Below are positions 13,490 to 62,123 of a stretch of 64,000 nt of DNA, one piece after another. The notes under the pieces are model-generated. The model ran no database searches and was not told the origin of the DNA. It saw only the letters and a program-made list of their open reading frames with translations. The stretch lies in the sequence record MK250017.1. One strand, given 5' to 3'. The translations under genes were made by a program, and so were the position numbers. The first letter of the stretch is position 1; every line of letters starts with the position of its first letter.

Positions 13490-13527
13490 ATTATTTCTTA
13501 TTTAATTATTATTGTTATTAACTAATA

Positions 13528-13537
13528 CAAAGATACA
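13528..13537 (-). promoter_or_regulatory. Bacteroidetes primary-sigma -7 promoter element (TGTATCTTTG)
   Basis: Matches TAnnTTTG; one of 9 intergenic copies of the same 10-mer. Confidence 0.7.
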
Positions 13538-13672
13538 TATTTTCCATGAAATAAAAAAAATAATATATATAAAAAATAAATATTTCTCCTGTATCGCATT
13601 ATTTTTAACTTACCTTAATACTTTACTATATAAGATATTTGGATGCGATACAGAAGAAATATGATATGAAAT

Positions 13673-14483: not shown

Positions 14484-14702
14484 TTAACAATATTCAGATG
14501 CTTCATGTTCAGCATTATCATAACCATCATTATATGCTAAACCATAAATTTCAGAAACAATATTTGCTATTTTATCAATATCTGTTTCTTTAATTTTTAA
14601 TTTAGATAACAATGGTAACATCTCTTTATGAAACTTATCAGATGCTTCACATTTACCAAAGAAGTCACCAGAACCGATATAATATGTTTTATTTTTATTC
14701 AT
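14484..14702 (-). CDS. Hypothetical protein
   Basis: 72-aa ORF downstream of TGTATCTTTG. Confidence 0.55.
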   Translation of the reverse strand: MNKNKTYYIGSGDFFGKCEASDKFHKEMLPLLSKLKIKETDIDKIANIVSEIYGLAYNDGYDNAEHEASEYC

Positions 14703-14732
14703 AATTTATTTTATCTTTATTAATTTATATAA

Positions 14733-14742
14733 CAAAGATACA
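14733..14742 (-). promoter_or_regulatory. Bacteroidetes-type -7 promoter element
   Basis: TGTATCTTTG on minus strand. Confidence 0.7.
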
Positions 14743-14764
14743 CATATTTTATGAAATAAAAAAA

Positions 14765-14977
14765 TTAAATGATAGAATCATCTTCATCTTGTTCAACTTT
14801 ATATGTATATCTTGGGTCAAAAGGTTCTGCATAATTAAGATCTACACACATTGCATATATCATAATAAATGGAAATGGAATAATTAAACCGAGATAAAAT
14901 AATATCTGTTGTAAACGGTAAATCAATACATCATTCCATTTGTACTTTTGTTTGTTCTTTGTTTTTATTAGTCTCAT
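14765..14977 (-). CDS. Small membrane protein
   Basis: 70 aa, one hydrophobic segment. Confidence 0.5.
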   Translation of the reverse strand: MRLIKTKNKQKYKWNDVLIYRLQQILFYLGLIIPFPFIMIYAMCVDLNYAEPFDPRYTYKVEQDEDDSII

Positions 14978-16139: not shown

Positions 16140-16168
16140 AATTTTATATTTTTAAATTTTTTATATTA

Positions 16169-16178
16169 CAAAGATACA
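16169..16178 (-). promoter_or_regulatory. Bacteroidetes-type -7 promoter element
   Basis: TGTATCTTTG on minus strand. Confidence 0.7.
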
Positions 16179-16200
16179 CATTTGTTTTTAAATAAAAAAA

Positions 16201-17142
16201 TTATTCTGGAAAAACTTCTATATTTTTTAAATTCCTAAAATCTGATACATTATATTTTAATGTTAACTTAATCACATTTCCATATAATACACAGTTACCT
16301 CTTGATATTTCTACATTTCTTGAACTTTGACAAAATATTCCAGCTCCATCATTATATCGTTCACATCTAATTAATCTTGCATGTTCACGTAATGCTTTAT
16401 CAGAATATAAACAATTTACAGTATTACCTAAATTATCTCTTAATATAAATGAGAAATAACCTAATCTTGTAATTGTGTTTACTGCTTCATTAAATTTATT
16501 AATCTGAAATTTAACATACTCATTTGACATATCATAATGTTTGTATGCATCGGACAACGCTTTATTATATACATTTTGAAATGTATTTTGCTGTATAATA
16601 TTATCTGTACATTTAATACTAATATTAAGAATTACTTTATTTCCATATATAACCGGTTCATCAACATCCAATTTATAATTATAACATTTTGTTGAAATAT
16701 CTGTAAGCTTTTCTAATATATGATTAAATGAAATATGTACACTTTCATTATTAGAACCTGTTACTTCATTATTTGCTATTAATGAAGAACCATTTATGGA
16801 AACAGATGAACCATGATTATTAACATATTTGTTTAACTTATCAACTGATACAATAACATTCAGTTTAATTGTTTTTGTTGATTCATTATATTCTATTTCT
16901 TTATATGACTTAATATAACCATTTGTGATCATTACAGTTTCATCTGTAAATAAGTCTTCTGTATTAATTGATGAACGTGATGATATATAAGTTCCATATG
17001 CATCTGCAAGAGCAAATCTCAATGCAGATAAAGTAGCTTCTTGTTTATTCTTACCAGTACCACAAGATTTTACCAAAACATCATTACAATAACAATTAAT
17101 ACATGTTATATAAAGAAATAAAAATATAATGAATCGTTTCAT
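16201..17142 (-). CDS. Exported protein, LPP20-like N-terminal domain
   Basis: Signal peptide MKRFIIFLFLYITC; GTGKNKQEATLSALRFAL motif. Confidence 0.5.
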   Translation of the reverse strand: MKRFIIFLFLYITCINCYCNDVLVKSCGTGKNKQEATLSALRFALADAYGTYISSRSSINTEDLFTDETVMITNGYIKSYKEIEYNESTKTIKLNVIVSVDKLNKYVNNHGSSVSINGSSLIANNEVTGSNNESVHISFNHILEKLTDISTKCYNYKLDVDEPVIYGNKVILNISIKCTDNIIQQNTFQNVYNKALSDAYKHYDMSNEYVKFQINKFNEAVNTITRLGYFSFILRDNLGNTVNCLYSDKALREHARLIRCERYNDGAGIFCQSSRNVEISRGNCVLYGNVIKLTLKYNVSDFRNLKNIEVFPE

Positions 17143-37818: not shown

Positions 37819-37893
37819 ATAATAATTAAAATGTATTTTATTATTTATTTTAGATAATAATTCATGAAATATTTTTTTAATTAAAATATTATA

Positions 37894-37903
37894 TGTATCT
37901 TTG
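37894..37903 (+). promoter_or_regulatory. Bacteroidetes-type -7 promoter element
   Basis: TGTATCTTTG. Confidence 0.7.
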
Positions 37904-37933
37904 AGTCACATAATAATTAATGAATAATATAAT

Positions 37934-38837: not shown

Positions 38838-40907
38838 ATGAAGAATTTTATTTTGTGTTTGCTCATTTCATTTGTGAGCGTTTTTAATTCTTATGCAGAC
38901 ACTGTAAATGATACATTGACTGCATTGAAGTTGAAGGAAGTTACCGTAACTTCTTTGTATCGAAATAATGTACAGACTGGTAGTATGATTAATACATCTA
39001 CTATTAAGATGATGAATCATGGTCAGGGTACAGATTATGTACTTTCTACATTGCCTAATATTTATGCATATAATGACAATGGTACGCAAATGGGTTATTG
39101 TTATTTCCGTATGCGTGGTATGGGTCAGGAACGTATGAATGTTACATTGGATGGAATGCCATGGAATGAAGCTGAAGATTTCGGATGTTATTTCAGTAAT
39201 TCTCCTGATCTTATGTCTAGTTTGCATTCTATTAAGGTAGAAAAGGGTGCATCAGTAACTAATAACGGTACAGCTGCATATGCTGGTAATGTTTCTCTGG
39301 AATCAGTAGATTTGAGAAAAGATACAGATTCGTGGTTTGACCTTGGTTATGGATCTTTTAATTCATCACGTGTGAGTGGAGTGTATAATATGGGTTTGAA
39401 GAACCATTGGGGATTGCATGTTCGTGCAACATCACAGCAAACTGATGGTTATAAGGAAAATACATATAATAATTCAAAGTCAATTACACTTAAGACTGGT
39501 TATTTCTTTAATGATAAGCATTCACTCGATTTCTTGACAATGACTGGTTATCATCGTAATGGTCAAGGTTTTATGGGTCTTACAGAAGATATGATTCCTA
39601 AGCATCCTACACCATTTAAGCAAATGAAGTCTGGTAATCGTCAACAGGAAACAGATGATTTCTTGACAACTTATAATAGATTTCAATATAAGGGAATTCT
39701 ATCAGATAAGGTCTTCTTGTCATCATCATTGTATTGGCAACATCAGACTGGTAATTATCGTATTGGATGGGATGATCCTTCACGACCTACTGGAAGTGTA
39801 TTGAATAATTATCATCTTAATTATAATCTTACAGGATTTAACACAGTAATTAAGTATTATCCAGCTAATAATCTTTCACTTACAACTGGTGTAAATGCAT
39901 ATGTTTATCATAGACGTCATAAGGGATATGATATTGCAAACTCTGATAGTATTATTACAGCATGGAAGAATCCAGGACTTACTCCTTATTATGATAATGC
40001 AGGAACAAAACCAGATGTAAATGTATTTGCAAATGTAAAGTATCAACCAATTAATAAGTTTACTATTGATGCTGCACTTCAATATCGTTATACATCACTT
40101 CATTATCGTGTAAATACACCAGCTATTGGTATTAATGGTGATTCTGATTTTAATCATGACTGGAATTTTATGAATTACAGTTTTGGACTTACATATGATA
40201 TTGATAAGTATTCAAAGGTATATGCACGTTATGCAGTCACAAACCGTGAACCTTCCAGAACTGATATGTTCGGCGGTGAATATCGTACAGATGAATCTGA
40301 AATGAATACAAAGTCAGAGCGCGTACATGATGTTGAACTTGGTTATGAAATTCGTAATAATAAGATTAATTTCAATATTAACGGTTTTTATATGAATTTC
40401 AGTAATGAACTTGTTGCAACAGGTGAACTTTCATCAATGAATGGTCTTCCTCTCCATAAGCAGCATGATTCATATCGACTTGGTTTGGAACTTGCGATGG
40501 ATTATAATCCTGTTAATACATTGCATCTTATTGCAAATGCTTCATGGTCAGAGAATAAGTTGAAGAACATTAATGGAAAGGAAATGAATCATACATTCTC
40601 ACCATCATCTACATTGTTTGCTGAAGCAAATTATTCTGTTAATAAGATTAAGTTCGGTGTAAATACGAATTTCCGTTCATCTATGTATATGGATATTTAT
40701 AATAATCATCAGCTTAAGGAAAACCTTACACTTAATGCATATGTTAATGCACGAGTATCAAAGATTGTAGAACTTAGTTTGAATCTTAATAATATTACGA
40801 ATCGTTTGAATTTCTCTAACGGATCAGTTGATATTCCATCAGATATAGCATATTATTTGGTTGATTCACCATTTAATATGTTTGCGACAGCTAAGTTTCA
40901 CTTTTAA
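38838..40907 (+). CDS. TonB-dependent outer-membrane receptor (vitamin/pyridine-nucleoside type)
   Basis: Signal peptide, TonB-box-like LKEVTVT, plug motif RMRGMGQERMNVTLDGMPWNEAED..VEKGA, barrel strands, C-terminal AKFHF; 689 aa. Confidence 0.9.
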   Translation: MKNFILCLLISFVSVFNSYADTVNDTLTALKLKEVTVTSLYRNNVQTGSMINTSTIKMMNHGQGTDYVLSTLPNIYAYNDNGTQMGYCYFRMRGMGQERMNVTLDGMPWNEAEDFGCYFSNSPDLMSSLHSIKVEKGASVTNNGTAAYAGNVSLESVDLRKDTDSWFDLGYGSFNSSRVSGVYNMGLKNHWGLHVRATSQQTDGYKENTYNNSKSITLKTGYFFNDKHSLDFLTMTGYHRNGQGFMGLTEDMIPKHPTPFKQMKSGNRQQETDDFLTTYNRFQYKGILSDKVFLSSSLYWQHQTGNYRIGWDDPSRPTGSVLNNYHLNYNLTGFNTVIKYYPANNLSLTTGVNAYVYHRRHKGYDIANSDSIITAWKNPGLTPYYDNAGTKPDVNVFANVKYQPINKFTIDAALQYRYTSLHYRVNTPAIGINGDSDFNHDWNFMNYSFGLTYDIDKYSKVYARYAVTNREPSRTDMFGGEYRTDESEMNTKSERVHDVELGYEIRNNKINFNINGFYMNFSNELVATGELSSMNGLPLHKQHDSYRLGLELAMDYNPVNTLHLIANASWSENKLKNINGKEMNHTFSPSSTLFAEANYSVNKIKFGVNTNFRSSMYMDIYNNHQLKENLTLNAYVNARVSKIVELSLNLNNITNRLNFSNGSVDIPSDIAYYLVDSPFNMFATAKFHF

Positions 40908-42307: not shown

Positions 42308-42372
42308 TGAAATAAAAATAATATCCATTAAGAAAAAAACTTAGTGGATATTTTTTTATATAAAGAATTATA

Positions 42373-42382
42373 TGTATCTTTG
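42373..42382 (+). promoter_or_regulatory. Bacteroidetes-type -7 promoter element
   Basis: TGTATCTTTG. Confidence 0.7.
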
Positions 42383-42418
42383 TATTGTAATTAAATAATA
42401 ATTTAAATAATAAAGAAT

Positions 42419-43852: not shown

Positions 43853-44330
43853 ATTTTATGTTATATTAGGTTATAATACAGAAACAGAAGCCTGGTATGG
43901 ATATGTAGAAAATTCTTTTTCTATGGGTGCAGATAAAAATAGAATTAGAACATTTTCTACATGTAGAGCAGATTATCCTTGGAAAGATAGATCATTTTCA
44001 GAGAGAAAACGAATAGCGAAAGCATATTTGAAGAAACATGGTTATAGATGTAATTATGCTCGTGATTATATTATAGATGCAAAGATGAATCCTAATTCAC
44101 CAAATCAATGGATTTATTTTTATTTGCGAGATATTGTAGACAATCTTAATAAAAAACATTATAATAATTGTTATTGGAAAGTATATAGAGTAAATTCTAA
44201 GTTTTGTCCTATTAATGTAAATATGAATGAATATTACAAAACATTAGTAAATAAGAAATTTAGGAAGTCTCTTGACAAATTTCAATTAAGAAATCAAGAA
44301 TTTTCTGTAAAGGAAGTTTCAAAAGATTAA
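43836..44330 (+). CDS. Hypothetical basic protein
   Basis: 164-aa ORF. Confidence 0.55.
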   Translation: MKKGTKFYVILGYNTETEAWYGYVENSFSMGADKNRIRTFSTCRADYPWKDRSFSERKRIAKAYLKKHGYRCNYARDYIIDAKMNPNSPNQWIYFYLRDIVDNLNKKHYNNCYWKVYRVNSKFCPINVNMNEYYKTLVNKKFRKSLDKFQLRNQEFSVKEVSKD

Positions 44331-44337
44331 AAATATA

Positions 44338-44592
44338 TCGGTATGGCTCTAAAGGAGAGAGCATCATTTATGACTAATGATGACGAAGATTTGTTCGTAA
44401 GTTAATCTTTACTAAGAGAATATACAATATTTAGTTATATAGAAGTAATTTAATTGTTATAATGCGAAGACAATTTTATATGAAACTATATATGTCATTT
44501 ATGAGATTATAGTGAAGAATAGCATTTACAGTAACTATAATAAGATGATATAAACAATATAACTTCTGTGGTTCGATTCCACACGTACTGAC
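44338..44592 (+). ncRNA. tRNA-like RNA with 186-nt insert in the variable region (TGA at anticodon position)
   Basis: Acceptor tcggtatg/cgtactga, D stem gctc/gagc, stem tcatt/aatga with loop tatgact, T arm tgtgg-ttcgatt-ccaca. Confidence 0.65.
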
Positions 44593-44610
44593 TAATAAAC
44601 ATATAACATT

Positions 44611-44829
44611 ATGAAAGAAGAAATTAAATTCTTAGGTAAAACACCGAGAGAAATTGCAGAACGTTACTTCAATAAATCATATGAAGGTAAAGAACGATAT
44701 GATATTTTAGTTGAAGGCTTTATTGAGGGATTTAATTATCTATTTCCTCATTATGATATAGCTAATACTTTGGTTGAAACATTTGAACGAATTAAAGAAT
44801 TAGAGAATAAAGAGAAAAAAGATTCATAA
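44611..44829 (+). CDS. Hypothetical protein
   Basis: 72-aa ORF. Confidence 0.5.
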   Translation: MKEEIKFLGKTPREIAERYFNKSYEGKERYDILVEGFIEGFNYLFPHYDIANTLVETFERIKELENKEKKDS

Positions 44830-44854
44830 TTATTTTTTTAATTGAAATAAAATA

Positions 44855-44864
44855 TGTATCTTTG
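44855..44864 (+). promoter_or_regulatory. Bacteroidetes-type -7 promoter element driving the ncRNA island
   Basis: TGTATCTTTG; no ORF downstream. Confidence 0.7.
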
Positions 44865-44870
44865 TATTGT

Positions 44871-44974
44871 AAATAATGAACACCTATAAGTGTTAAGTAA
44901 CATAGGTATGGAAACCCTACGGTTCGTAAGTAGTAATATCGAATAGTCCGCATAATAGGAACATGTCATTATTT
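44871..44974 (+). ncRNA. Candidate ~104-nt structured small RNA
   Basis: 9-bp terminal stem aaataatga/tcattattt starting at the expected +1; internal cctat/atagg and ttcg/cgaa stems. Confidence 0.4.
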
Positions 44975-45014
44975 TAACATTTATATAAGAATATACTACA
45001 TGTCTTATATGAGC

Positions 45015-45355
45015 GTCAGGAGTATTGTAACAGAGTCGACGTGTTTACATTTTTAGAGGCGCAGTTTTTAAATCTGACTATTCTATGTAAAGTAGTGAAG
45101 TGCAAGATACGGCGTCAGTACAAGTCTATATAATAAGTTGCAAATAAAAATAGAAACTGTTAAAATTCGTATCTAAATTTGTCTGTATTTCACAATGGTC
45201 AATGAGGTACATGAAAAGTGATTTGGAAGAATCATTATAGACATATTATGATTAAGATAACGTTCAACTAAGCTATAGAATAATAGTAAGTATAGCGCTG
45301 AAAATATATGTTTATATGTATTGCGGTTGTGGTTCGAATCCACATACAGACACGA
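45015..45355 (+). ncRNA. ssrA: Atypical tmRNA
   Basis: gagtcgac (cf. GAUUCGAC), helix-2 pairing tattctat/atagaata, actaagctataga (cf. ACUAAGCAUGUAG), resume context taagttGCA, T arm tgtgg-ttcgaat-ccaca; about 340 nt. Confidence 0.7.
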
Positions 45356-45360
45356 CTTAT

Positions 45361-45860
45361 TAATGATGAAAAGTCTGCACTTAACAAAATATAAAAAACA
45401 TTTTAATGTACTGTTGATTATATGTTTTAATTTTGTTAAATAAGAGATTATTGTAAATTATAGAAATTTACAAATCGAGGGGAACGCATAACGGCAATTA
45501 TGTTAGTACTTGGCGTTTAATGAAATGAATATGTATATTTGCCGATATGCATATGAGTGACATTAAATGATAAAATTATAATAGTGTAGCGGTTCGCACG
45601 CCCGTTGGTAAAACGGGAAGGGTTTATGTTTGAAAGCATATTAGGGGTTCGACTCCCGCTTATAAACAATTAAATTACATAATGTTCTCACGAAGAGCGA
45701 GCATCGGAAGGTGAGCAATTTAGAAAGATGTTTAAGAGTGATCATATTAAATTGATTTCTAACAGAAATACGGTGACGTAGGAGCTGAAAAAGAACAAAC
45801 GTATGGTAATGTTAGCATTATGTATTTAAAAAATATTAGTCCTCACAGACTTTACATTTT
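45361..45860 (+). ncRNA. Candidate large ornate ncRNA with kissing loop and embedded cloverleaf
   Basis: Closing helix aaagtctg/cagacttt plus aatg/catt; at least 8 internal stems; loop-loop cggcaa/ttgccg; terminator follows. Confidence 0.6.
45575..45667 (+). tRNA. Degenerate class-II tRNA-like cloverleaf, Tyr(GTA) by loop centre
   Basis: Acceptor ttataa/ttataa, D arm gtgt/gcac, cccgt-tggtaaa-acggg, long variable arm, T loop ttcgact with only 3-bp stem. Confidence 0.45.
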
Positions 45861-45891
45861 TTATAACTTTAAAATTTTGAATTTAATATTA

Positions 45892-45925
45892 AATCCGATG
45901 CTTGTGGTAAGTATCGGATTTTTTT
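45892..45925 (+). terminator. Intrinsic terminator closing the ncRNA island
   Basis: aatccgatgctt-gtggt-aagtatcggatt followed by a T run. Confidence 0.8.
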
Positions 45926-45940
45926 AATTCATAAAAAATA

Positions 45941-45950
45941 TGTATCTTTG
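45941..45950 (+). promoter_or_regulatory. Bacteroidetes-type -7 promoter element
   Basis: TGTATCTTTG upstream of nadR. Confidence 0.7.
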
Positions 45951-45980
45951 TAATATATTAAATAATAATTAAATAATTAA

Positions 45981-47141
45981 ATGATTAAGAATATAGGAAT
46001 TTGTTTTGGTGGTTATTGTCCTATGCATCAGGGACATCTTGACCTTATAATGAAAGCAAAGAAAGAAAATGATATTTGTTATGTGGTTGTTTGTGGTTAT
46101 ACAGATGAACCACGAGGTAATGAATTAGGTCTTAATATTAATAATAGAAAAAGACTTATTAAAGAGTTTTTTAAAAATGATGAACTTATTCGAGTTCTTA
46201 CTGTAAATGATACAGAATTAGGTATTGATGAAAGTATGTCTGAACATAATTGGAAAGTATGGACAGATTATGTAAAATATCAAATTACAGATGATCTTCT
46301 AGGTGGAGGTCCGACATTTCCATTTAGTCCAGATGAAAGGATTAAAGCGCATGAATTGAAACTTACATTCTATGTTGGTGAAAAGTTCTATGTTGAATCA
46401 TTGAATAAATTAAATATTAATGCAGTGTTAGTTGGTTACGATGAGAATTCTCCATCTAATAGAAGTAATGATATATCAGCAACATATATTAGACAAAATC
46501 CTCAATATTATTGGGATAAGATTGTATCAACATTTAAACCTGCATTAACAAAGAAAATTCTTGTATTAGGTACAGCATCAGAAGGGAAATCAACACTTGT
46601 TAAAGATATTGGTAATTATTTTAATATACCATATACAACAGAATTCGGTAGGGATTATATGGAGAAACATTGTATGTTAGATCCTGATATTACTGTAAAT
46701 GATTTTGTTGAATTCCTTATTGGACAGAGACAATACTATTTTGATGCTTTGAATGATAAAGGAAATAAGGGCGTTATCATTTCAGATACAGATAATCTCG
46801 TTACACTTATGTATGCAAAAGCATATGTATCTGATAATAATATGCAAATTACTGAAGATGAATATAACAATATATTGAAACCACTTGCAAAATCATTACA
46901 AACAGGTGTTTCATGGGATGTAATTTATCTTATCAAACCGCATAATAAATTTGTTGATGATGGAACACGTTACATGAATCAATCTTCAATAGATGAGAGA
47001 ATGAAGAATTATAAAATTCTTTTATCATTACTTGAAGAGTTTGGTTTACTTGATAAAGTAATTGAATTGAATGGTTCTTATATGGATCATTTTAATTATG
47101 TTAAGGATTATATCACAAAATTATATGATAAAGAAAATTAA
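45981..47141 (+). CDS. nadR: NadR-type NMN adenylyltransferase / ribosylnicotinamide kinase
   Basis: FGGYCPMHQGH (HxGH), then Walker A GTASEGKST, EFGRDY, DTDNLVT, FVDDGTR. Confidence 0.88.
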   Translation: MIKNIGICFGGYCPMHQGHLDLIMKAKKENDICYVVVCGYTDEPRGNELGLNINNRKRLIKEFFKNDELIRVLTVNDTELGIDESMSEHNWKVWTDYVKYQITDDLLGGGPTFPFSPDERIKAHELKLTFYVGEKFYVESLNKLNINAVLVGYDENSPSNRSNDISATYIRQNPQYYWDKIVSTFKPALTKKILVLGTASEGKSTLVKDIGNYFNIPYTTEFGRDYMEKHCMLDPDITVNDFVEFLIGQRQYYFDALNDKGNKGVIISDTDNLVTLMYAKAYVSDNNMQITEDEYNNILKPLAKSLQTGVSWDVIYLIKPHNKFVDDGTRYMNQSSIDERMKNYKILLSLLEEFGLLDKVIELNGSYMDHFNYVKDYITKLYDKEN

Positions 47142-47790
47142 TAATATATTATATTCAGAGTTTATAGAAGGAAGAAATATTAATGAACATTTGTTTATGC
47201 TCATTGGTATTTTCCTTCAATTAATTGCATGGTATATAACTAAAGATTCATTAATTTCTTTAATATCGGGTGTAACTGGTATTATATCTGTTATATTATG
47301 TTCACAAAGAAAGATTTCATTTTATTTCTTTGGCTTTATACAGTTAGGAACATATATGTATCTTGCATGGCAGCAAAGATTTTATGGTGAATTAATAGAG
47401 AATGTATTTTATATTATTACTATGTTAATAGGTATTGTAGTATGGTTAAAAAATTATAATACTGAAGAACAAATAGTAGAATCTAAAAGACTTTCTGATA
47501 GGTTATTCTATATAATATGTAGTATAATGGTGTTTATCTGTGTATTATTTGGTTATTATATGAAATACTTTACAGATAATACACAACCATTTATGGATTC
47601 ATTTTCAACAGTACCTGCATTTATAGCGCAGACATTGTTAATGTTACGATATAGAGAACAATGGATATTCTGGATTATAATTGATGTTGTTTCTATATTC
47701 ATGTGGATGTTTGCTGATAATTGGATAATGGTTATTCAATTTATATTTTGGACAATGAATTGCATATATGGTTATAGAAAATGGAAATAA
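47125..47790 (+). CDS. pnuC: PnuC-family nicotinamide riboside transporter
   Basis: Multi-TM; SGVTGIISVILCSQRK, FMDSFST, REQWIFWIIIDVVSI; overlaps nadR. Confidence 0.9.
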   Translation: MIKKINNILYSEFIEGRNINEHLFMLIGIFLQLIAWYITKDSLISLISGVTGIISVILCSQRKISFYFFGFIQLGTYMYLAWQQRFYGELIENVFYIITMLIGIVVWLKNYNTEEQIVESKRLSDRLFYIICSIMVFICVLFGYYMKYFTDNTQPFMDSFSTVPAFIAQTLLMLRYREQWIFWIIIDVVSIFMWMFADNWIMVIQFIFWTMNCIYGYRKWK

Positions 47791-61081: not shown

Positions 61082-61097
61082 ATTATAATGTTTATAA

Positions 61098-62123
61098 TTT
61101 ATTATAATAAAAGTATTTAATAAATGTGGACATATAAATGAAATTACAAGACAAGCAATAAACTATTACTATAGGAATAGTAATCATATATATTGTAATA
61201 AGTGTGAATATAAAGAATTAACATATAGGAGTAATTTTGAAAAAGATGTTGTTAAAGAAATAGGAAATATTATAAAAGAAACTAACTATTCTATTATAAC
61301 AAATAAACATATTTATAATGGTAAAGAACATTTTGAAGTTGATATATTAATTCCTGAATTAAATTTAGCAATAGACTGNNNNNNNNNNNNNNNNNNNNNN
61401 NNNNNNNNNNNNNNNNNNNNNNNNNNNNNNNNNNNNNNNNNNNNNNNNNNNNNNNNNNNNNNNNNNNNNNNNNNNNNNNNNNNNNNNNNNNNNNNNNATG
61501 ATATTTATAAGAAAGACATTATATTAAGCCGTTTATCTAGTAAATTAAAATTAAATAAACATATATATGCAAGAAAATGTTTAATTAAAGAATTGACTCC
61601 TAAATTATATAGGGATTTCTGTAATGAAAATCATTTACATGGATCTGTTAATGCTTCAATAAAAGTAGGATTATTTTTTAATGATGAGTTAGTTGAAGTA
61701 ATAGGTTTAGGTAAATCTCGTAAATTAATAGGTAATAATAAAGAAGAAGTTTCATATGAATTATTACGTTTATGTACAAAGAAATATATTAACGTTATAG
61801 GTGGTTTTTCTAAATTAATGAATTATGTTATTAATAAGTTTAATATAAATTTAATATATAGTTATGCAGATTTATCATGGATAGATTTAAAAGGAACATC
61901 ATACATTAATAGTGGATTTTATATAGATAAAGTTATTGATAATGAATATTGGTGGGTTGTAAACAATATACGAGAGAATCGATTGAATTATACAAAGAGT
62001 AAATTGGTATCATTAGGGTATGATAAGCATTTAACAGAAATTGAAATAATGCATTCTTTAAAGTATTATAGAATATTTGGTCCTGGAAATTTAAAATTTA
62101 TATATAAAAAGAAAAGTCTCTAA
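61098..62123 (+). pseudogene. Hef-like homing endonuclease, apparently 5'-truncated (no ATG; partly masked)
   Basis: Open frame KCGH..CNKC..EVDILIPELNLAID in frame with FCNENHLHG, YELLRLC, GGFSKL, SYADL. Confidence 0.6.

What the first reader, a model, noticed from the sequence alone, without database searches (positions are those of the whole stretch)
45361..45860. Candidate ~500-nt ornate non-coding RNA with a perfect kissing loop
Seen: an ORF-free stretch closed by a long-range helix (aaagtctg 45370-77 / cagacttt 45846-53, plus aatg/catt). It contains a 9-bp ttaacaaaa/ttttgttaa stem and a 9-bp ttgtaaatt/aatttacaa hairpin. Hairpin cataa-CGGCAA-ttatg (45487-45502) and the 10-bp hairpin with loop TTGCCG (45529-45554) have exactly complementary loops. 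Also present are an embedded cloverleaf and an 11-bp tacataatgtt/agcattatgta domain holding ctcac/gtgag, ttagaaa/tttctaa and tacg/cgta stems. An intrinsic terminator follows. Established: phage tRNA regions host large ornate RNAs such as GOLLD and ROOL. I cannot match it to either from memory, so it may be a new class.
Basis: partly seen in the sequence, partly recalled or inferred. Interest (0 to 1): 0.85.

Follow-up and report, generated by a model that had tools for sequence, protein, structure and literature searches.

The report
Modular phage non-coding RNAs, not one
The flagged 500 bases of this Prevotella megaphage (Lak-A1) are real structured non-coding RNA, but they are three separate modules (a kissing-hairpin domain, a degenerate tRNA-shaped element and a 155-nt pseudoknotted RNA) rather than one closed 500-nt RNA, and the 155-nt module belongs to an undescribed RNA family that sits inside tRNA arrays of other huge phages.

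Summary
The window is Prevotella phage Lak-A1. Comparison with the B clade of Lak phages (about 75% identical) supports most helices by compensatory changes. This includes the loop-loop pairing CGGCAA/UUGCCG, which reads CUGCAA/UUGCAG or UUGUAG in the B clade.

The long-range closing helix is confined to the A clade. It competes with a local hairpin that does covary. The tacg/cgta hairpin is not kept and is replaced by a strongly covarying pseudoknot.

The interval is the 3' part of a roughly 1.05-kb non-coding unit running from a promoter box at 44857-64 to a terminator at 45891-45925. The unit is built of separable modules divided by tRNA-shaped elements.

The "cloverleaf" is a degenerate tRNA-Tyr look-alike with G33 and sub-threshold model scores. 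A canonical tRNA-Tyr lies elsewhere in the genome.

The last module (45669-45830) matches no Rfam family. It has homologues in four other huge-phage contigs, each abutting tRNAs inside a tRNA array.

Best model: host RNase P and RNase Z cut at the tRNA-shaped elements and release the modules, whose loops mediate RNA-RNA pairing. Function remains unknown. It is a new RNA family of the GOLLD/ROOL kind, not a member of either.

The parts
44857..44864 (+). Promoter -7 box TATCTTTG (Bacteroidetes type TAnnTTTG), part of a ~45-nt repeat. It is the likely start of the non-coding transcription unit, with transcription beginning near 44870.
   Evidence: The repeat occurs at least 10 times in the window ahead of genes. 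It is conserved in A and B clades. RNA contigs from other loci diverge from this one at 44870-74. The consensus is from established knowledge of Bacteroides sigma-A promoters.
44873..45104 (+). 5' module: several covarying hairpins. It is optional, being absent in some natural variants, and has the highest RNA contig depth.
   Evidence: Covariation over 44868-45180: 46 pairs, 97.4% paired, 8 pairs changed on both sides against 0-2 in slid controls. The module is deleted in L031 and in an RNA contig of run X9. Depth in X14 is 677-1507 against about 30 in flanks.
45181..45352 (+). tRNA-shaped element 2. It has an acceptor stem (45181-87 / 45345-51), a GG-containing D-like loop and a T arm (TGTGGTTCGAATCCACA). 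The anticodon arm is replaced by a branched insertion. The element is 172 nt in the A clade and 99 nt in the B clade.
   Evidence: The acceptor helix has 8 bp with 4 pairs changed on both sides between clades. ARAGORN calls the B version 'tRNA-Ile', 99 nt. The Rfam tRNA model gives 19.2 bits on the T arm and acceptor only.
45354..45375 (+). Local hairpin Pa (GACUU 45354-58 / AAGUC 45371-75).
   Evidence: The B clade has UCCUU/AAGGA, so two pairs are changed on both sides.
45370..45853 (+). It is present in the A clade only.
   Evidence: It appears in the minimum-free-energy fold of A1. It is kept in all A-type variants, and L030 has CAGATTTT. The B clade has no partner.
45381..45439 (+). Variable hairpin Pb (UUAACAAAA / UUUUGUUAA). 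Its interior is not alignable between clades.
   Evidence: The base of the helix is kept: UUAAC/GUUAA becomes UUAUC/GAUAA, one pair changed on both sides.
45451..45473 (+). Hairpin Pc (UUGUAAAUU / AAUUUACAA).
   Evidence: The B clade has a different sequence that still pairs, GUAACUA/UAGUUAC. It is in the minimum-free-energy fold.
45486..45503 (+). Hairpin Pd, with 6-nt loop L1 CGGCAA (45492-97).
   Evidence: Stem pair C-G becomes U-A in the B clade. The helix is 100% paired.
45514..45569 (+). Long hairpin Pe/Pf, with 6-nt loop L2 UUGCCG (45539-44). L2 is complementary to L1.
   Evidence: Pf has 5 pairs changed on both sides. For the loop-loop pairs, 45493:45543 changes from G-C to U-A, and 45494:45542 from G-C to G-U in L007/L024. 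Only the six loop positions stay complementary in all clades.
45575..45667 (+). tRNA-shaped element 3, a degenerate type-II tRNA-Tyr look-alike. Its anticodon loop is U-G-(G/A)-U-A-A-A, so it has G33. It has an A1:A72 mismatch, an all-A/U acceptor stem and a T stem of 3-4 bp.
   Evidence: ARAGORN calls it tRNA-Tyr(gta). The best Rfam hit in the tRNA clan is 18.6 bits against a cut-off of 47. It is not found by RF00005 in the whole Lak-A2 genome, where 33 tRNAs score 30-75 bits. A canonical tRNA-Tyr lies elsewhere. The anticodon and variable stems covary.
45669..45830 (+). A ~155-nt pseudoknotted RNA, member of a family found in tRNA arrays of huge phages. Helices: P1 45676-86/45814-24; P2 45687-91/45711-15; pseudoknot 45702-06/45771-75; P3 45720-26/45756-62; P3a 45731-35/45747-51; P5 45794-97/45810-13.
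   Evidence: Within Lak: 35 pairs, 12 changed on both sides. Family-wide: 22 of 30 pairs changed on both sides. The pseudoknot is complementary in 7 different sequence versions. Homologues score 35.8-52.3 bits. No Rfam family matches.
45736..45746 (+). 11-nt apical loop GAGUGAUCAUA, holding the palindromic hexamer UGAUCA (45739-44). It is a candidate site for self-pairing between two RNA molecules.
   Evidence: Equivalent loops hold UGUACA (G007), UCGCGA (G006) and GUGCAC (G008). L079 has none in the loop.
45798..45809 (+). Invariant 12-nt loop AACGUAUGGUAA of P5.
   Evidence: It is identical in all family members, whose local G+C runs from 0.29 to 0.54 (sequences).
45891..45925 (+). Intrinsic terminator: a 14-bp stem, a 3-nt loop and a T run.
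   Evidence: Found by the terminator scan. The B clade has a different stem-loop plus T run at the same place.
45943..45950 (+). The next promoter -7 box TATCTTTG, serving the nadR-like gene (45981-47141).
   Evidence: Promoter repeat; gene annotation.

Best explanation
**What it is.** The interval is the 3' two-thirds of a roughly 1.05-kb non-coding transcription unit of phage Lak-A1. The unit is a string of independently folding RNA modules separated by tRNA-shaped elements. In order:
1. an optional 5' module;
2. tRNA-shaped element 2;
3. a Lak-specific array of hairpins ending in two hairpins whose 6-nt loops pair;
4. tRNA-shaped element 3, a decayed tRNA-Tyr;
5. a 155-nt pseudoknotted RNA;
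6. the terminator.

**How it most likely works.** The tRNA-shaped elements keep an acceptor stem, T arm and elbow, but not a normal anticodon arm. I infer that they serve as cutting marks for host RNase P (5' side) and RNase Z or other 3' processing (3' side). The modules would then be released as separate stable RNAs, just as the homologous 155-nt RNA is excised from between genuine tRNAs in other huge phages. I further infer that the released RNAs act through RNA-RNA pairing:
- L1/L2 kissing, either within one molecule or between molecules;
- a palindromic apical loop that could join two copies of the 155-nt RNA.

**Shown:** the structures and their covariation, the modularity, the promoter and terminator, presence in RNA libraries, and the wider family with its tRNA-array context.

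**Inferred:** the cleavages, any oligomerisation, and any downstream role, for example on the host tRNA or translation apparatus.
For: **Identity and transcription unit.**
- The window is 100% identical to Lak-A1.
- The unit is bounded by a promoter repeat and a terminator, both conserved in the two clades.
- Lak intergenic regions were reported as highly expressed (preprint 10.1101/356790).

**Structures.** Covariation supports each module.

**Modularity.**
- The 5' module is deleted in natural variants.
- tRNA-shaped element 2 is 172 nt in the A clade and 99 nt in the B clade.
- The kissing domain has no homologue outside Lak.
- The 155-nt RNA occurs alone in four other huge-phage contigs, abutting tRNAs:
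  - tRNA-Tyr | RNA;
  - tRNA-Trp | RNA | tRNA-Met;
  - tRNA-Pro | RNA | tRNA-Asn;
  - tRNA-Ile | RNA.

**The tRNA-shaped elements are not decoding tRNAs.**
- They score below model thresholds, and element 3 has G33.
- A canonical tRNA-Tyr with loop CUGUAAA lies elsewhere in the genome.
- Their stems nevertheless covary.

**Hints of processing.**
- RNA contig depth differs 20-50 fold between modules.
- Contigs of run X14 start at 45185 and 45670, within 2-4 nt of the predicted 5' end of element 2 and 3' end of element 3.

**RNA-RNA pairing.**
- The loop pairs covary.
- Only the loops remain complementary across clades.
- The apical loop is palindromic in 4 of 5 lineages.
- In ROOL, a covarying kissing loop proved to be intermolecular (PMC12286853).
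Against: - No read-end data are available. The RNA runs were held only as assembled contigs, which cannot show RNA ends. Their depth is a poor measure of abundance, and DNA carry-over is possible.
- Contig breaks in the other runs do not coincide with the predicted cut sites.
- Within Lak, covariation rests essentially on one A-to-B divergence plus minor variants.
- The closing helix is conserved within the A clade. In that clade a larger fold could therefore exist.
- The palindromic loop is absent in L079. In G008 it has a competing local hairpin.
- No function is demonstrated.
Confidence: 0.55

Rival explanations
1. One discrete ornate RNA of about 500 nt (45361-45860) is closed by the helix AAAGUCUG/CAGACUUU. 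It has an embedded cloverleaf and an internal kissing loop.
For: - The helix is in the minimum-free-energy fold of A1 (z -3.69).
- Its 3' arm is a conserved island in all A-type variants. One variant has a G-U-compatible change.
- The kissing loops covary.
Against: - The B clade has no partner for the 5' arm.
- The 5' arm lies in a local hairpin with two compensatory pairs.
- The promoter lies about 490 nt upstream of the proposed start, and none is seen at 45361.
- The 3' domain is a free-standing RNA in other phages.
- The kissing domain is absent from those phages.
Confidence: 0.08
2. The whole transcript of about 1.05 kb works unprocessed, as one giant GOLLD-like RNA. The tRNA-shaped elements would sit in linker regions, and the kissing and palindromic loops would build a multimeric assembly.
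For: - All modules are co-transcribed from one promoter to one terminator.
- GOLLD exceeds 800 nt and has a variable 5' part and a conserved 3' part. It sometimes carries tRNAs in its linker and assembles through kissing loops (PMC12286853).
- The length of the 45332-45832 segment is the same, 501 nt, in both clades.
Against: - The 5' module is dispensable in nature.
- Depth differs strongly between modules in RNA contigs.
- The 155-nt module stands alone between tRNAs elsewhere.
- No covarying helix links the modules in the all-against-all scan.
- No GOLLD or ROOL match appears even at E<=10.
Confidence: 0.17
3. The cloverleaf is a working tRNA-Tyr whose altered anticodon loop (G33; A34 in the B clade) lets it escape host anticodon nucleases. 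The flanking domains would merely be its structured leader and trailer.
For: - The cloverleaf, with a long variable arm and anticodon GUA, is maintained by compensatory changes.
- From my own knowledge, not tested here: phage tRNAs with altered anticodon loops are reported to evade tRNA-targeting defences, and tRNA-Tyr is among the targets.
Against: - Its scores are far below tRNA thresholds.
- It has a non-U33, an A1:A72 mismatch, a T stem of 3-4 bp and a C discriminator.
- The anticodon differs between clades, GUA against AUA.
- The genome already holds a canonical tRNA-Tyr.
- The 'trailer' is a conserved RNA family in its own right.
Confidence: 0.12
4. It is a cis-regulatory leader, such as a riboswitch or attenuator, for the downstream nadR-pnuC genes.
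For: It lies directly upstream of NAD-salvage genes on the same strand.
Against: - A strong terminator and then a separate promoter box lie between it and nadR.
- No NAD riboswitch match was found.
- More distant nadR-bearing relatives lack it upstream.
- Homologues of the 155-nt RNA lie in tRNA arrays, not near nadR.
Confidence: 0.03

Closest known systems
GOLLD RNA (phage and prophage giant ornate RNA)
   Same: It is phage-encoded, of unknown function and associated with tRNAs, which sometimes sit inside its linker. It has a variable 5' part and a conserved 3' part, and kissing loops supported by covariation (PMC12286853).
   Different: The Rfam GOLLD model gives no match, even at E<=10. Here the modules are separable, and the conserved 3' module is only about 155 nt and stands alone in other phages.
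ROOL RNA
   Same: It is a phage RNA found near tRNA islands, with pseudoknots. One covarying loop-loop pairing was later shown to be intermolecular.
   Different: There is no Rfam match. The size and architecture differ, and no evidence of a cage-like assembly exists here.
Stable RNAs in the phage T4 tRNA gene cluster (species 1 and 2, rnaC/rnaD). Recalled from my own knowledge, not tested here.
   Same: They are small stable RNAs of unknown function, encoded among phage tRNA genes and matured with them.
   Different: No sequence was available for comparison. The present family was found only in huge-phage contigs from metagenomes.
tRNA-like processing signals: plant mitochondrial t-elements (PMC1920247, listed) and MALAT1/mascRNA (from my own knowledge)
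   Same: These are tRNA-shaped elements that do not decode but recruit RNase P or RNase Z to define the ends of neighbouring RNAs. That is the role proposed here for the two tRNA-shaped elements.
   Different: Those examples are eukaryotic or organellar. Cleavage has not been shown here.
Loop-loop dimerisation or ring formation: the palindromic DIS loop of HIV-1 and the complementary loops of phi29 pRNA (from my own knowledge)
   Same: In each, a palindromic hexamer in an apical loop, or two complementary loops in one RNA, changes sequence between lineages while staying complementary.
   Different: There is no homology, and oligomerisation has not been tested here.
tmRNA
   Same: It is a tRNA-like acceptor and T arm with a large insertion, as in tRNA-shaped elements 1 and 2.
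   Different: There is no G3:U70 pair, no conserved tag reading frame and no Rfam or default ARAGORN tmRNA call. Only relaxed ARAGORN settings give a doubtful call.

Membership tests
GOLLD (Rfam model) | A match to the curated covariance model of the conserved 3' region | tested here: not met
   No hit at the gathering score on the 64-kb window. No hit at E<=10 on 44500-46200.
ROOL (Rfam model) | A match to the curated covariance model | tested here: not met
   No hit.
tRNA (RF00005), for the cloverleaf 45575-45667 | A covariance-model score at or above 29 bits | tested here: not met
   Not listed at E<=10. The best clan hit is tRNA-Sec at 18.6 bits against a cut-off of 47. It is not found in the whole Lak-A2 genome, where 33 tRNAs score 30-75 bits.
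tRNA, for the cloverleaf 45575-45667 | A four-arm cloverleaf maintained in evolution | tested here: met
   ARAGORN call. 24 pairs, 96.4% paired, with the anticodon and variable stems covarying.
tRNA, for the cloverleaf 45575-45667 | U33, a 7-bp acceptor stem and a 5-bp T stem | tested here: not met
   The loop is U-G-(G/A)-U-A-A-A. There is an A1:A72 mismatch. T-stem pair 71:85 pairs in 3 of 7 sequences.
tmRNA | A tRNA-like domain plus a tag reading frame, and a match to the model | tested here: not met
   Rfam gives 10.5 bits on 13 nt only. Default ARAGORN finds none.
NAD+ riboswitches and other cis-regulators of nadR/pnuC | A match to the model and continuity with the regulated gene | tested here: not met
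   No Rfam hit. A terminator and a separate promoter intervene.
New family: 155-nt RNA of huge-phage tRNA arrays (defined here) | P1 closing helix; motif CGAAGAGC followed by the pseudoknot 5' arm; pseudoknot 3' arm followed by CGUAG; P5 hairpin with loop AACGUAUGGUAA | tested here: met
   Window 45669-45827 scores 196 bits because the model was built from it. Independent members score 35.8-52.3 bits. The pseudoknot and P5 are complementary in every member.
New family: 155-nt RNA of huge-phage tRNA arrays | Location abutting tRNA genes | tested here: inconclusive
   In the four other phages it abuts canonical tRNAs. In Lak it abuts only the degenerate tRNA-Tyr-like element and lies outside the tRNA clusters.

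The most novel reading that the evidence does not exclude
The 155-nt module defines a previously undescribed class of structured RNA that huge phages carry inside their tRNA arrays. It has cloverleaf-like topology, an invariant 12-nt loop, a pseudoknot and a self-complementary apical loop. Under this reading it is excised by the tRNA-processing machinery, pairs with a second copy of itself, and acts on the host tRNA or translation apparatus or is itself catalytic. In Lak it has been joined to further lineage-specific kissing-loop RNAs, using decayed tRNAs as processing punctuation.
Probability: 0.35. Interest if true: 0.8.

Novelty: new variant of a known kind. Interest (0 to 1): 0.66.

Why it matters
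Lak megaphages were reported to have large, highly expressed intergenic regions and "enigmatic" oversized tRNAs, with no explanation given (PMC6784885; preprint 10.1101/356790). This locus now has a concrete anatomy: structured RNA modules punctuated by tRNA-shaped elements.

One module links Lak to four other huge phages through a strongly covarying RNA fold of about 155 nt that no curated library holds. It adds a compact, tractable member to the small set of phage RNAs associated with tRNA islands (GOLLD, ROOL), whose function is a long-standing open question.

The model makes simple predictions that can be tested:
- cleavage by RNase P and RNase Z at the tRNA-shaped elements;
- self-pairing of two copies of the 155-nt RNA through the palindromic loop;
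- kissing of L1 and L2.

Tried and rejected
**Hidden protein gene.** No ORF of 70 aa or more appears, even with TAG read as sense. No ORF is conserved in length between clades.

**Known RNA families.** I searched Rfam at the gathering threshold and then permissively. Only chance-level hits appeared: rteR, SNORA50, DUF2693 and freshwater-2.

**RNase P RNA, SRP RNA and tmRNA.** I considered these by eye because of motifs such as GAAUAGUCC, ACAGAA and AAUAGUC. I dropped them because:
- there is no model match;
- the motifs are not conserved in the other phages;
- the pairings do not fit.

**Repeat family.** The 12-15 'places' per Lak genome seen in BLAST are only the promoter repeat.

**More distant homologues of the whole locus.**
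- None lies upstream of nadR in relatives at 42-50% identity.
- Covariance-model hits of 16-22 bits in those contigs lie inside ORFs.

**Motif scans.**
- The metagenome scan gave only A- and B-type Lak plus three chance hits.
- Bacterial and archaeal genome scans gave no hit with the first pattern. The 11 hits with the relaxed pattern are coding-sequence chance matches.
- Two further viral scans added no members.
- The 5' module motif is found only in Lak.

**Other leads.**
- GenBank phages hold no homologue other than Lak.
- Neighbouring proteins gave no functional clue.
- An extended L1/L2 duplex, instead of loop kissing, is possible in A1 (16 of 18 positions) but is not conserved (12 of 18 in the B clade).
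- An alternative helix P1b (GUUCU/AGAAC) overlaps the better-supported P5 and P1.

**Technical limit.** Structure-aware MAFFT modes were not installed.
Full report
**Identity and setting.**
- Window 44300-46000 is 100% identical to Prevotella phage Lak-A1. It is 96.6-97.3% identical to Lak-A2 and Lak-C1 and about 75% identical, in blocks, to the nine baboon B-clade genomes.
- G+C content is about 25%.
- Under the standard code, and with TAG read as sense (the code reported for Lak), 45344-45980 is one of only two ORF-free stretches of 450 nt or more in the window.
- The downstream genes are NadR-like and PnuC-like.
- The Lak paper reported large, highly expressed intergenic regions and oversized 'tRNAs with introns', including a tRNA-Tyr(GTA), without further analysis (PMC6784885; preprint 10.1101/356790).

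**Checking the observation.**
- The 500 nt fold better than shuffles (z -3.69), and the minimum-free-energy fold of A1 contains the proposed closing helix.
- Complementary hairpin loops of 6 nt or more arise in 20 of 300 shuffles. The loop match alone is therefore weak evidence, and comparative data decide.

**Homologues.** Protein-anchored and motif scans of IMG/VR and of metagenome contigs gave 16 distinct versions of the locus. All are A-type (94.5-100% identical) or B-type.

**What covaries in the first part of the interval.**
GACUU/AAGUC becomes UCCUU/AAGGA in the B clade.
- The 9-bp ttaacaaaa stem keeps its base, with one compensatory pair.
- The ttgtaaatt hairpin is replaced in the B clade by GUAACUA/UAGUUAC.
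- For hairpin Pd, the long hairpin Pe/Pf and the loop-loop pairing, 31 pairs are 96.4% paired. Eight pairs are changed on both sides, against 0-2 when partners are slid.
- The loop pairing itself changes from G-C to U-A at 45493:45543 and from G-C to G-U at 45494:45542.
- Only the six loop positions stay complementary in all clades. An extended duplex is possible in A1 (16 of 18 positions) but not in the B clade (12 of 18).
- The closing helix has no B-clade counterpart. Its 3' arm is, however, a conserved island in all A-type variants.

**The cloverleaf (45575-45667).**
- ARAGORN calls it tRNA-Tyr.
- Rfam's tRNA model does not report it. The best hit in the tRNA clan is 18.6 bits against a cut-off of 47.
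- RF00005 over the whole Lak-A2 genome finds 33 tRNAs above its 29-bit cut-off, at 30-75 bits, and none at this locus.
- Among them is a canonical, GC-rich tRNA-Tyr with loop CUGUAAA.
- The element here has G33, GUA in the A clade but AUA in the B clade, an A1:A72 mismatch and a T stem of 3-4 bp.
- Its anticodon and variable stems covary.
- It is therefore a maintained tRNA shape without the marks of a decoder.
- A second such element lies at 45181-45352. Its acceptor stem has four compensatory pairs. Its 'anticodon arm' is 73 nt longer in the A clade.
- A third lies at 44339-44590.

**The 3' domain (45669-45830).**
- Helices P1, P3, P3a and P5 covary. P2 is invariant.
- The tacg/cgta hairpin is not kept.
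- An all-against-all scan found a pseudoknot between the P2 loop (45702-06) and 45771-75, with four of five pairs changed on both sides.
- With the pseudoknot included, there are 35 pairs, 98.3% paired. Twelve are changed on both sides, against 0-2 in slid controls.

**A wider family.**
- A covariance model of this domain found nothing credible in nadR-bearing relatives.
- Motif scans of IMG/VR followed by model scoring gave four further members in contigs of 35-228 kb, with local G+C of 0.40-0.54. They score 52.3, 48.8, 41 and 35.8 bits.
- In each contig the RNA sits inside a tRNA array and abuts tRNAs:
  - tRNA-Tyr | RNA;
  - tRNA-Trp | RNA | tRNA-Met;
  - tRNA-Pro | RNA | tRNA-Asn;
  - tRNA-Ile | RNA.
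- The pseudoknot arms lie directly after GAAGAGCNNN and directly before NCGUAG. They are complementary in seven different versions.
- P5 and P1 also change in step. Family-wide, 22 of 30 pairs are changed on both sides. That alignment was fitted to the model, so the count leans towards it.
- Loop AACGUAUGGUAA is invariant.
- The apical loop of the P3 arm carries a palindromic hexamer in four of five lineages. UGAUCA, UGUACA and UCGCGA sit in an 11-nt loop of the same design, and GUGCAC is the fourth.
- No Rfam family matches these loci apart from the tRNAs.
- Bacterial and archaeal genomes gave only coding-sequence chance hits.
- GenBank phages gave only Lak.
- The kissing-domain model found nothing outside Lak.

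**Transcription unit and RNA evidence.**
- A repeat of about 45 nt with a Bacteroidetes -7 box (TATCTTTG) precedes many genes in the window. It occurs at 44857-64 and again at 45943-50.
- With the terminator (the B clade has a different one at the same place), this delimits a non-coding unit of about 1.05 kb.
- Its first 232 nt (44873-45104) form a further covarying module. That module is missing from some natural variants.
- Animal-gut metatranscriptome runs hold the locus, but only as contigs:
  - depth peaks 20-50 fold over the 5' module;
  - two contigs of one run begin 2-4 nt from the predicted borders of the tRNA-shaped elements.
- These are hints, not proof.

**Interpretation.**
- The interval is a composite, not one closed RNA.
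- The most economical mechanism is tRNA-punctuated processing. Decayed tRNAs are retained for their shape. Host RNase P and RNase Z cut at them and release the modules. The homologous 155-nt RNA would be released in the same way from genuine tRNA arrays elsewhere.
- The pairing potential of the loops suggests RNA-RNA assembly. As ROOL showed, a covarying loop pairing can be intermolecular.
- Function is unknown.
- Confidence:
  - the structural and modular part is well supported, about 0.85;
  - processing is inferred, about 0.55;
  - oligomerisation and any role are speculative.

**Novelty.** This is a new RNA family, with lineage-specific additions, of the known kind 'phage structured RNAs associated with tRNA islands'. 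It is not a member of GOLLD or ROOL.

Noticed in passing
window 44331-44610: A third tRNA-shaped element lies here. It has an acceptor stem (CGGTATG 44339-45 / CGTACTG 44584-90), a D-like arm and a T arm (GGTTCGATTCC 44570-80), with an insertion of about 170 nt. RNA contig depth is raised in one run.
   Followed up: partly
window 44873-45104: The structured 5' module has the highest RNA contig depth. It is absent from variant L031 and from an RNA contig, so it is a present/absent polymorphism directly after the promoter.
   Followed up: partly
window 44611-44829: A 72-aa ORF between two non-coding regions is missing from B-clade Lak genomes.
   Followed up: no
window, e.g. 13498-13559, 14690-14765, 16156-16208, 37860-37933, 42331-42414, 44813-44877, 45918-45993: A promoter-like repeat of about 45-60 nt, with the Bacteroidetes -7 box TAnnTTTG, recurs at least 10 times on both strands.
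   Followed up: partly
window 45080 (A2, C1, L006 and others): A 17-nt tandem duplication, TTCTACGTAAAGTAGTG, occurs inside the 5' region in some A-type variants. It duplicates a small hairpin.
   Followed up: no
window 38838-40907, 45981-47141, 47071-47790: The phage encodes a TonB-dependent-receptor-like protein, a NadR-like NMN adenylyltransferase/kinase and a PnuC-like transporter.
   Followed up: no
window 61082-61592: This is the only other ORF-free stretch of 450 nt or more. Its G+C content is 14%.
   Followed up: no
L041 (Lak-A2 396000-420000): The main tRNA cluster holds unusually long or odd tRNAs by ARAGORN (His-atg 82 nt, Trp 92 nt). This fits the published 'tRNAs with introns'.
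   Followed up: no
L066 1660-1965 (IMGVR_UViG_3300028591_000081): Directly after the 155-nt RNA the sequence starts like a tRNA (GGCGGTGTAGCTCAG...), but no tRNA is called. About 300 nt separate it from the next tRNA.
   Followed up: no
window 45676-45824: The 155-nt RNA has the helix order of a cloverleaf: a closing helix, then hairpins in the D, anticodon and T positions. P1 and P5 together stack to 12-15 bp, close to the 12 bp of the acceptor and T stems of a tRNA.
   Followed up: no
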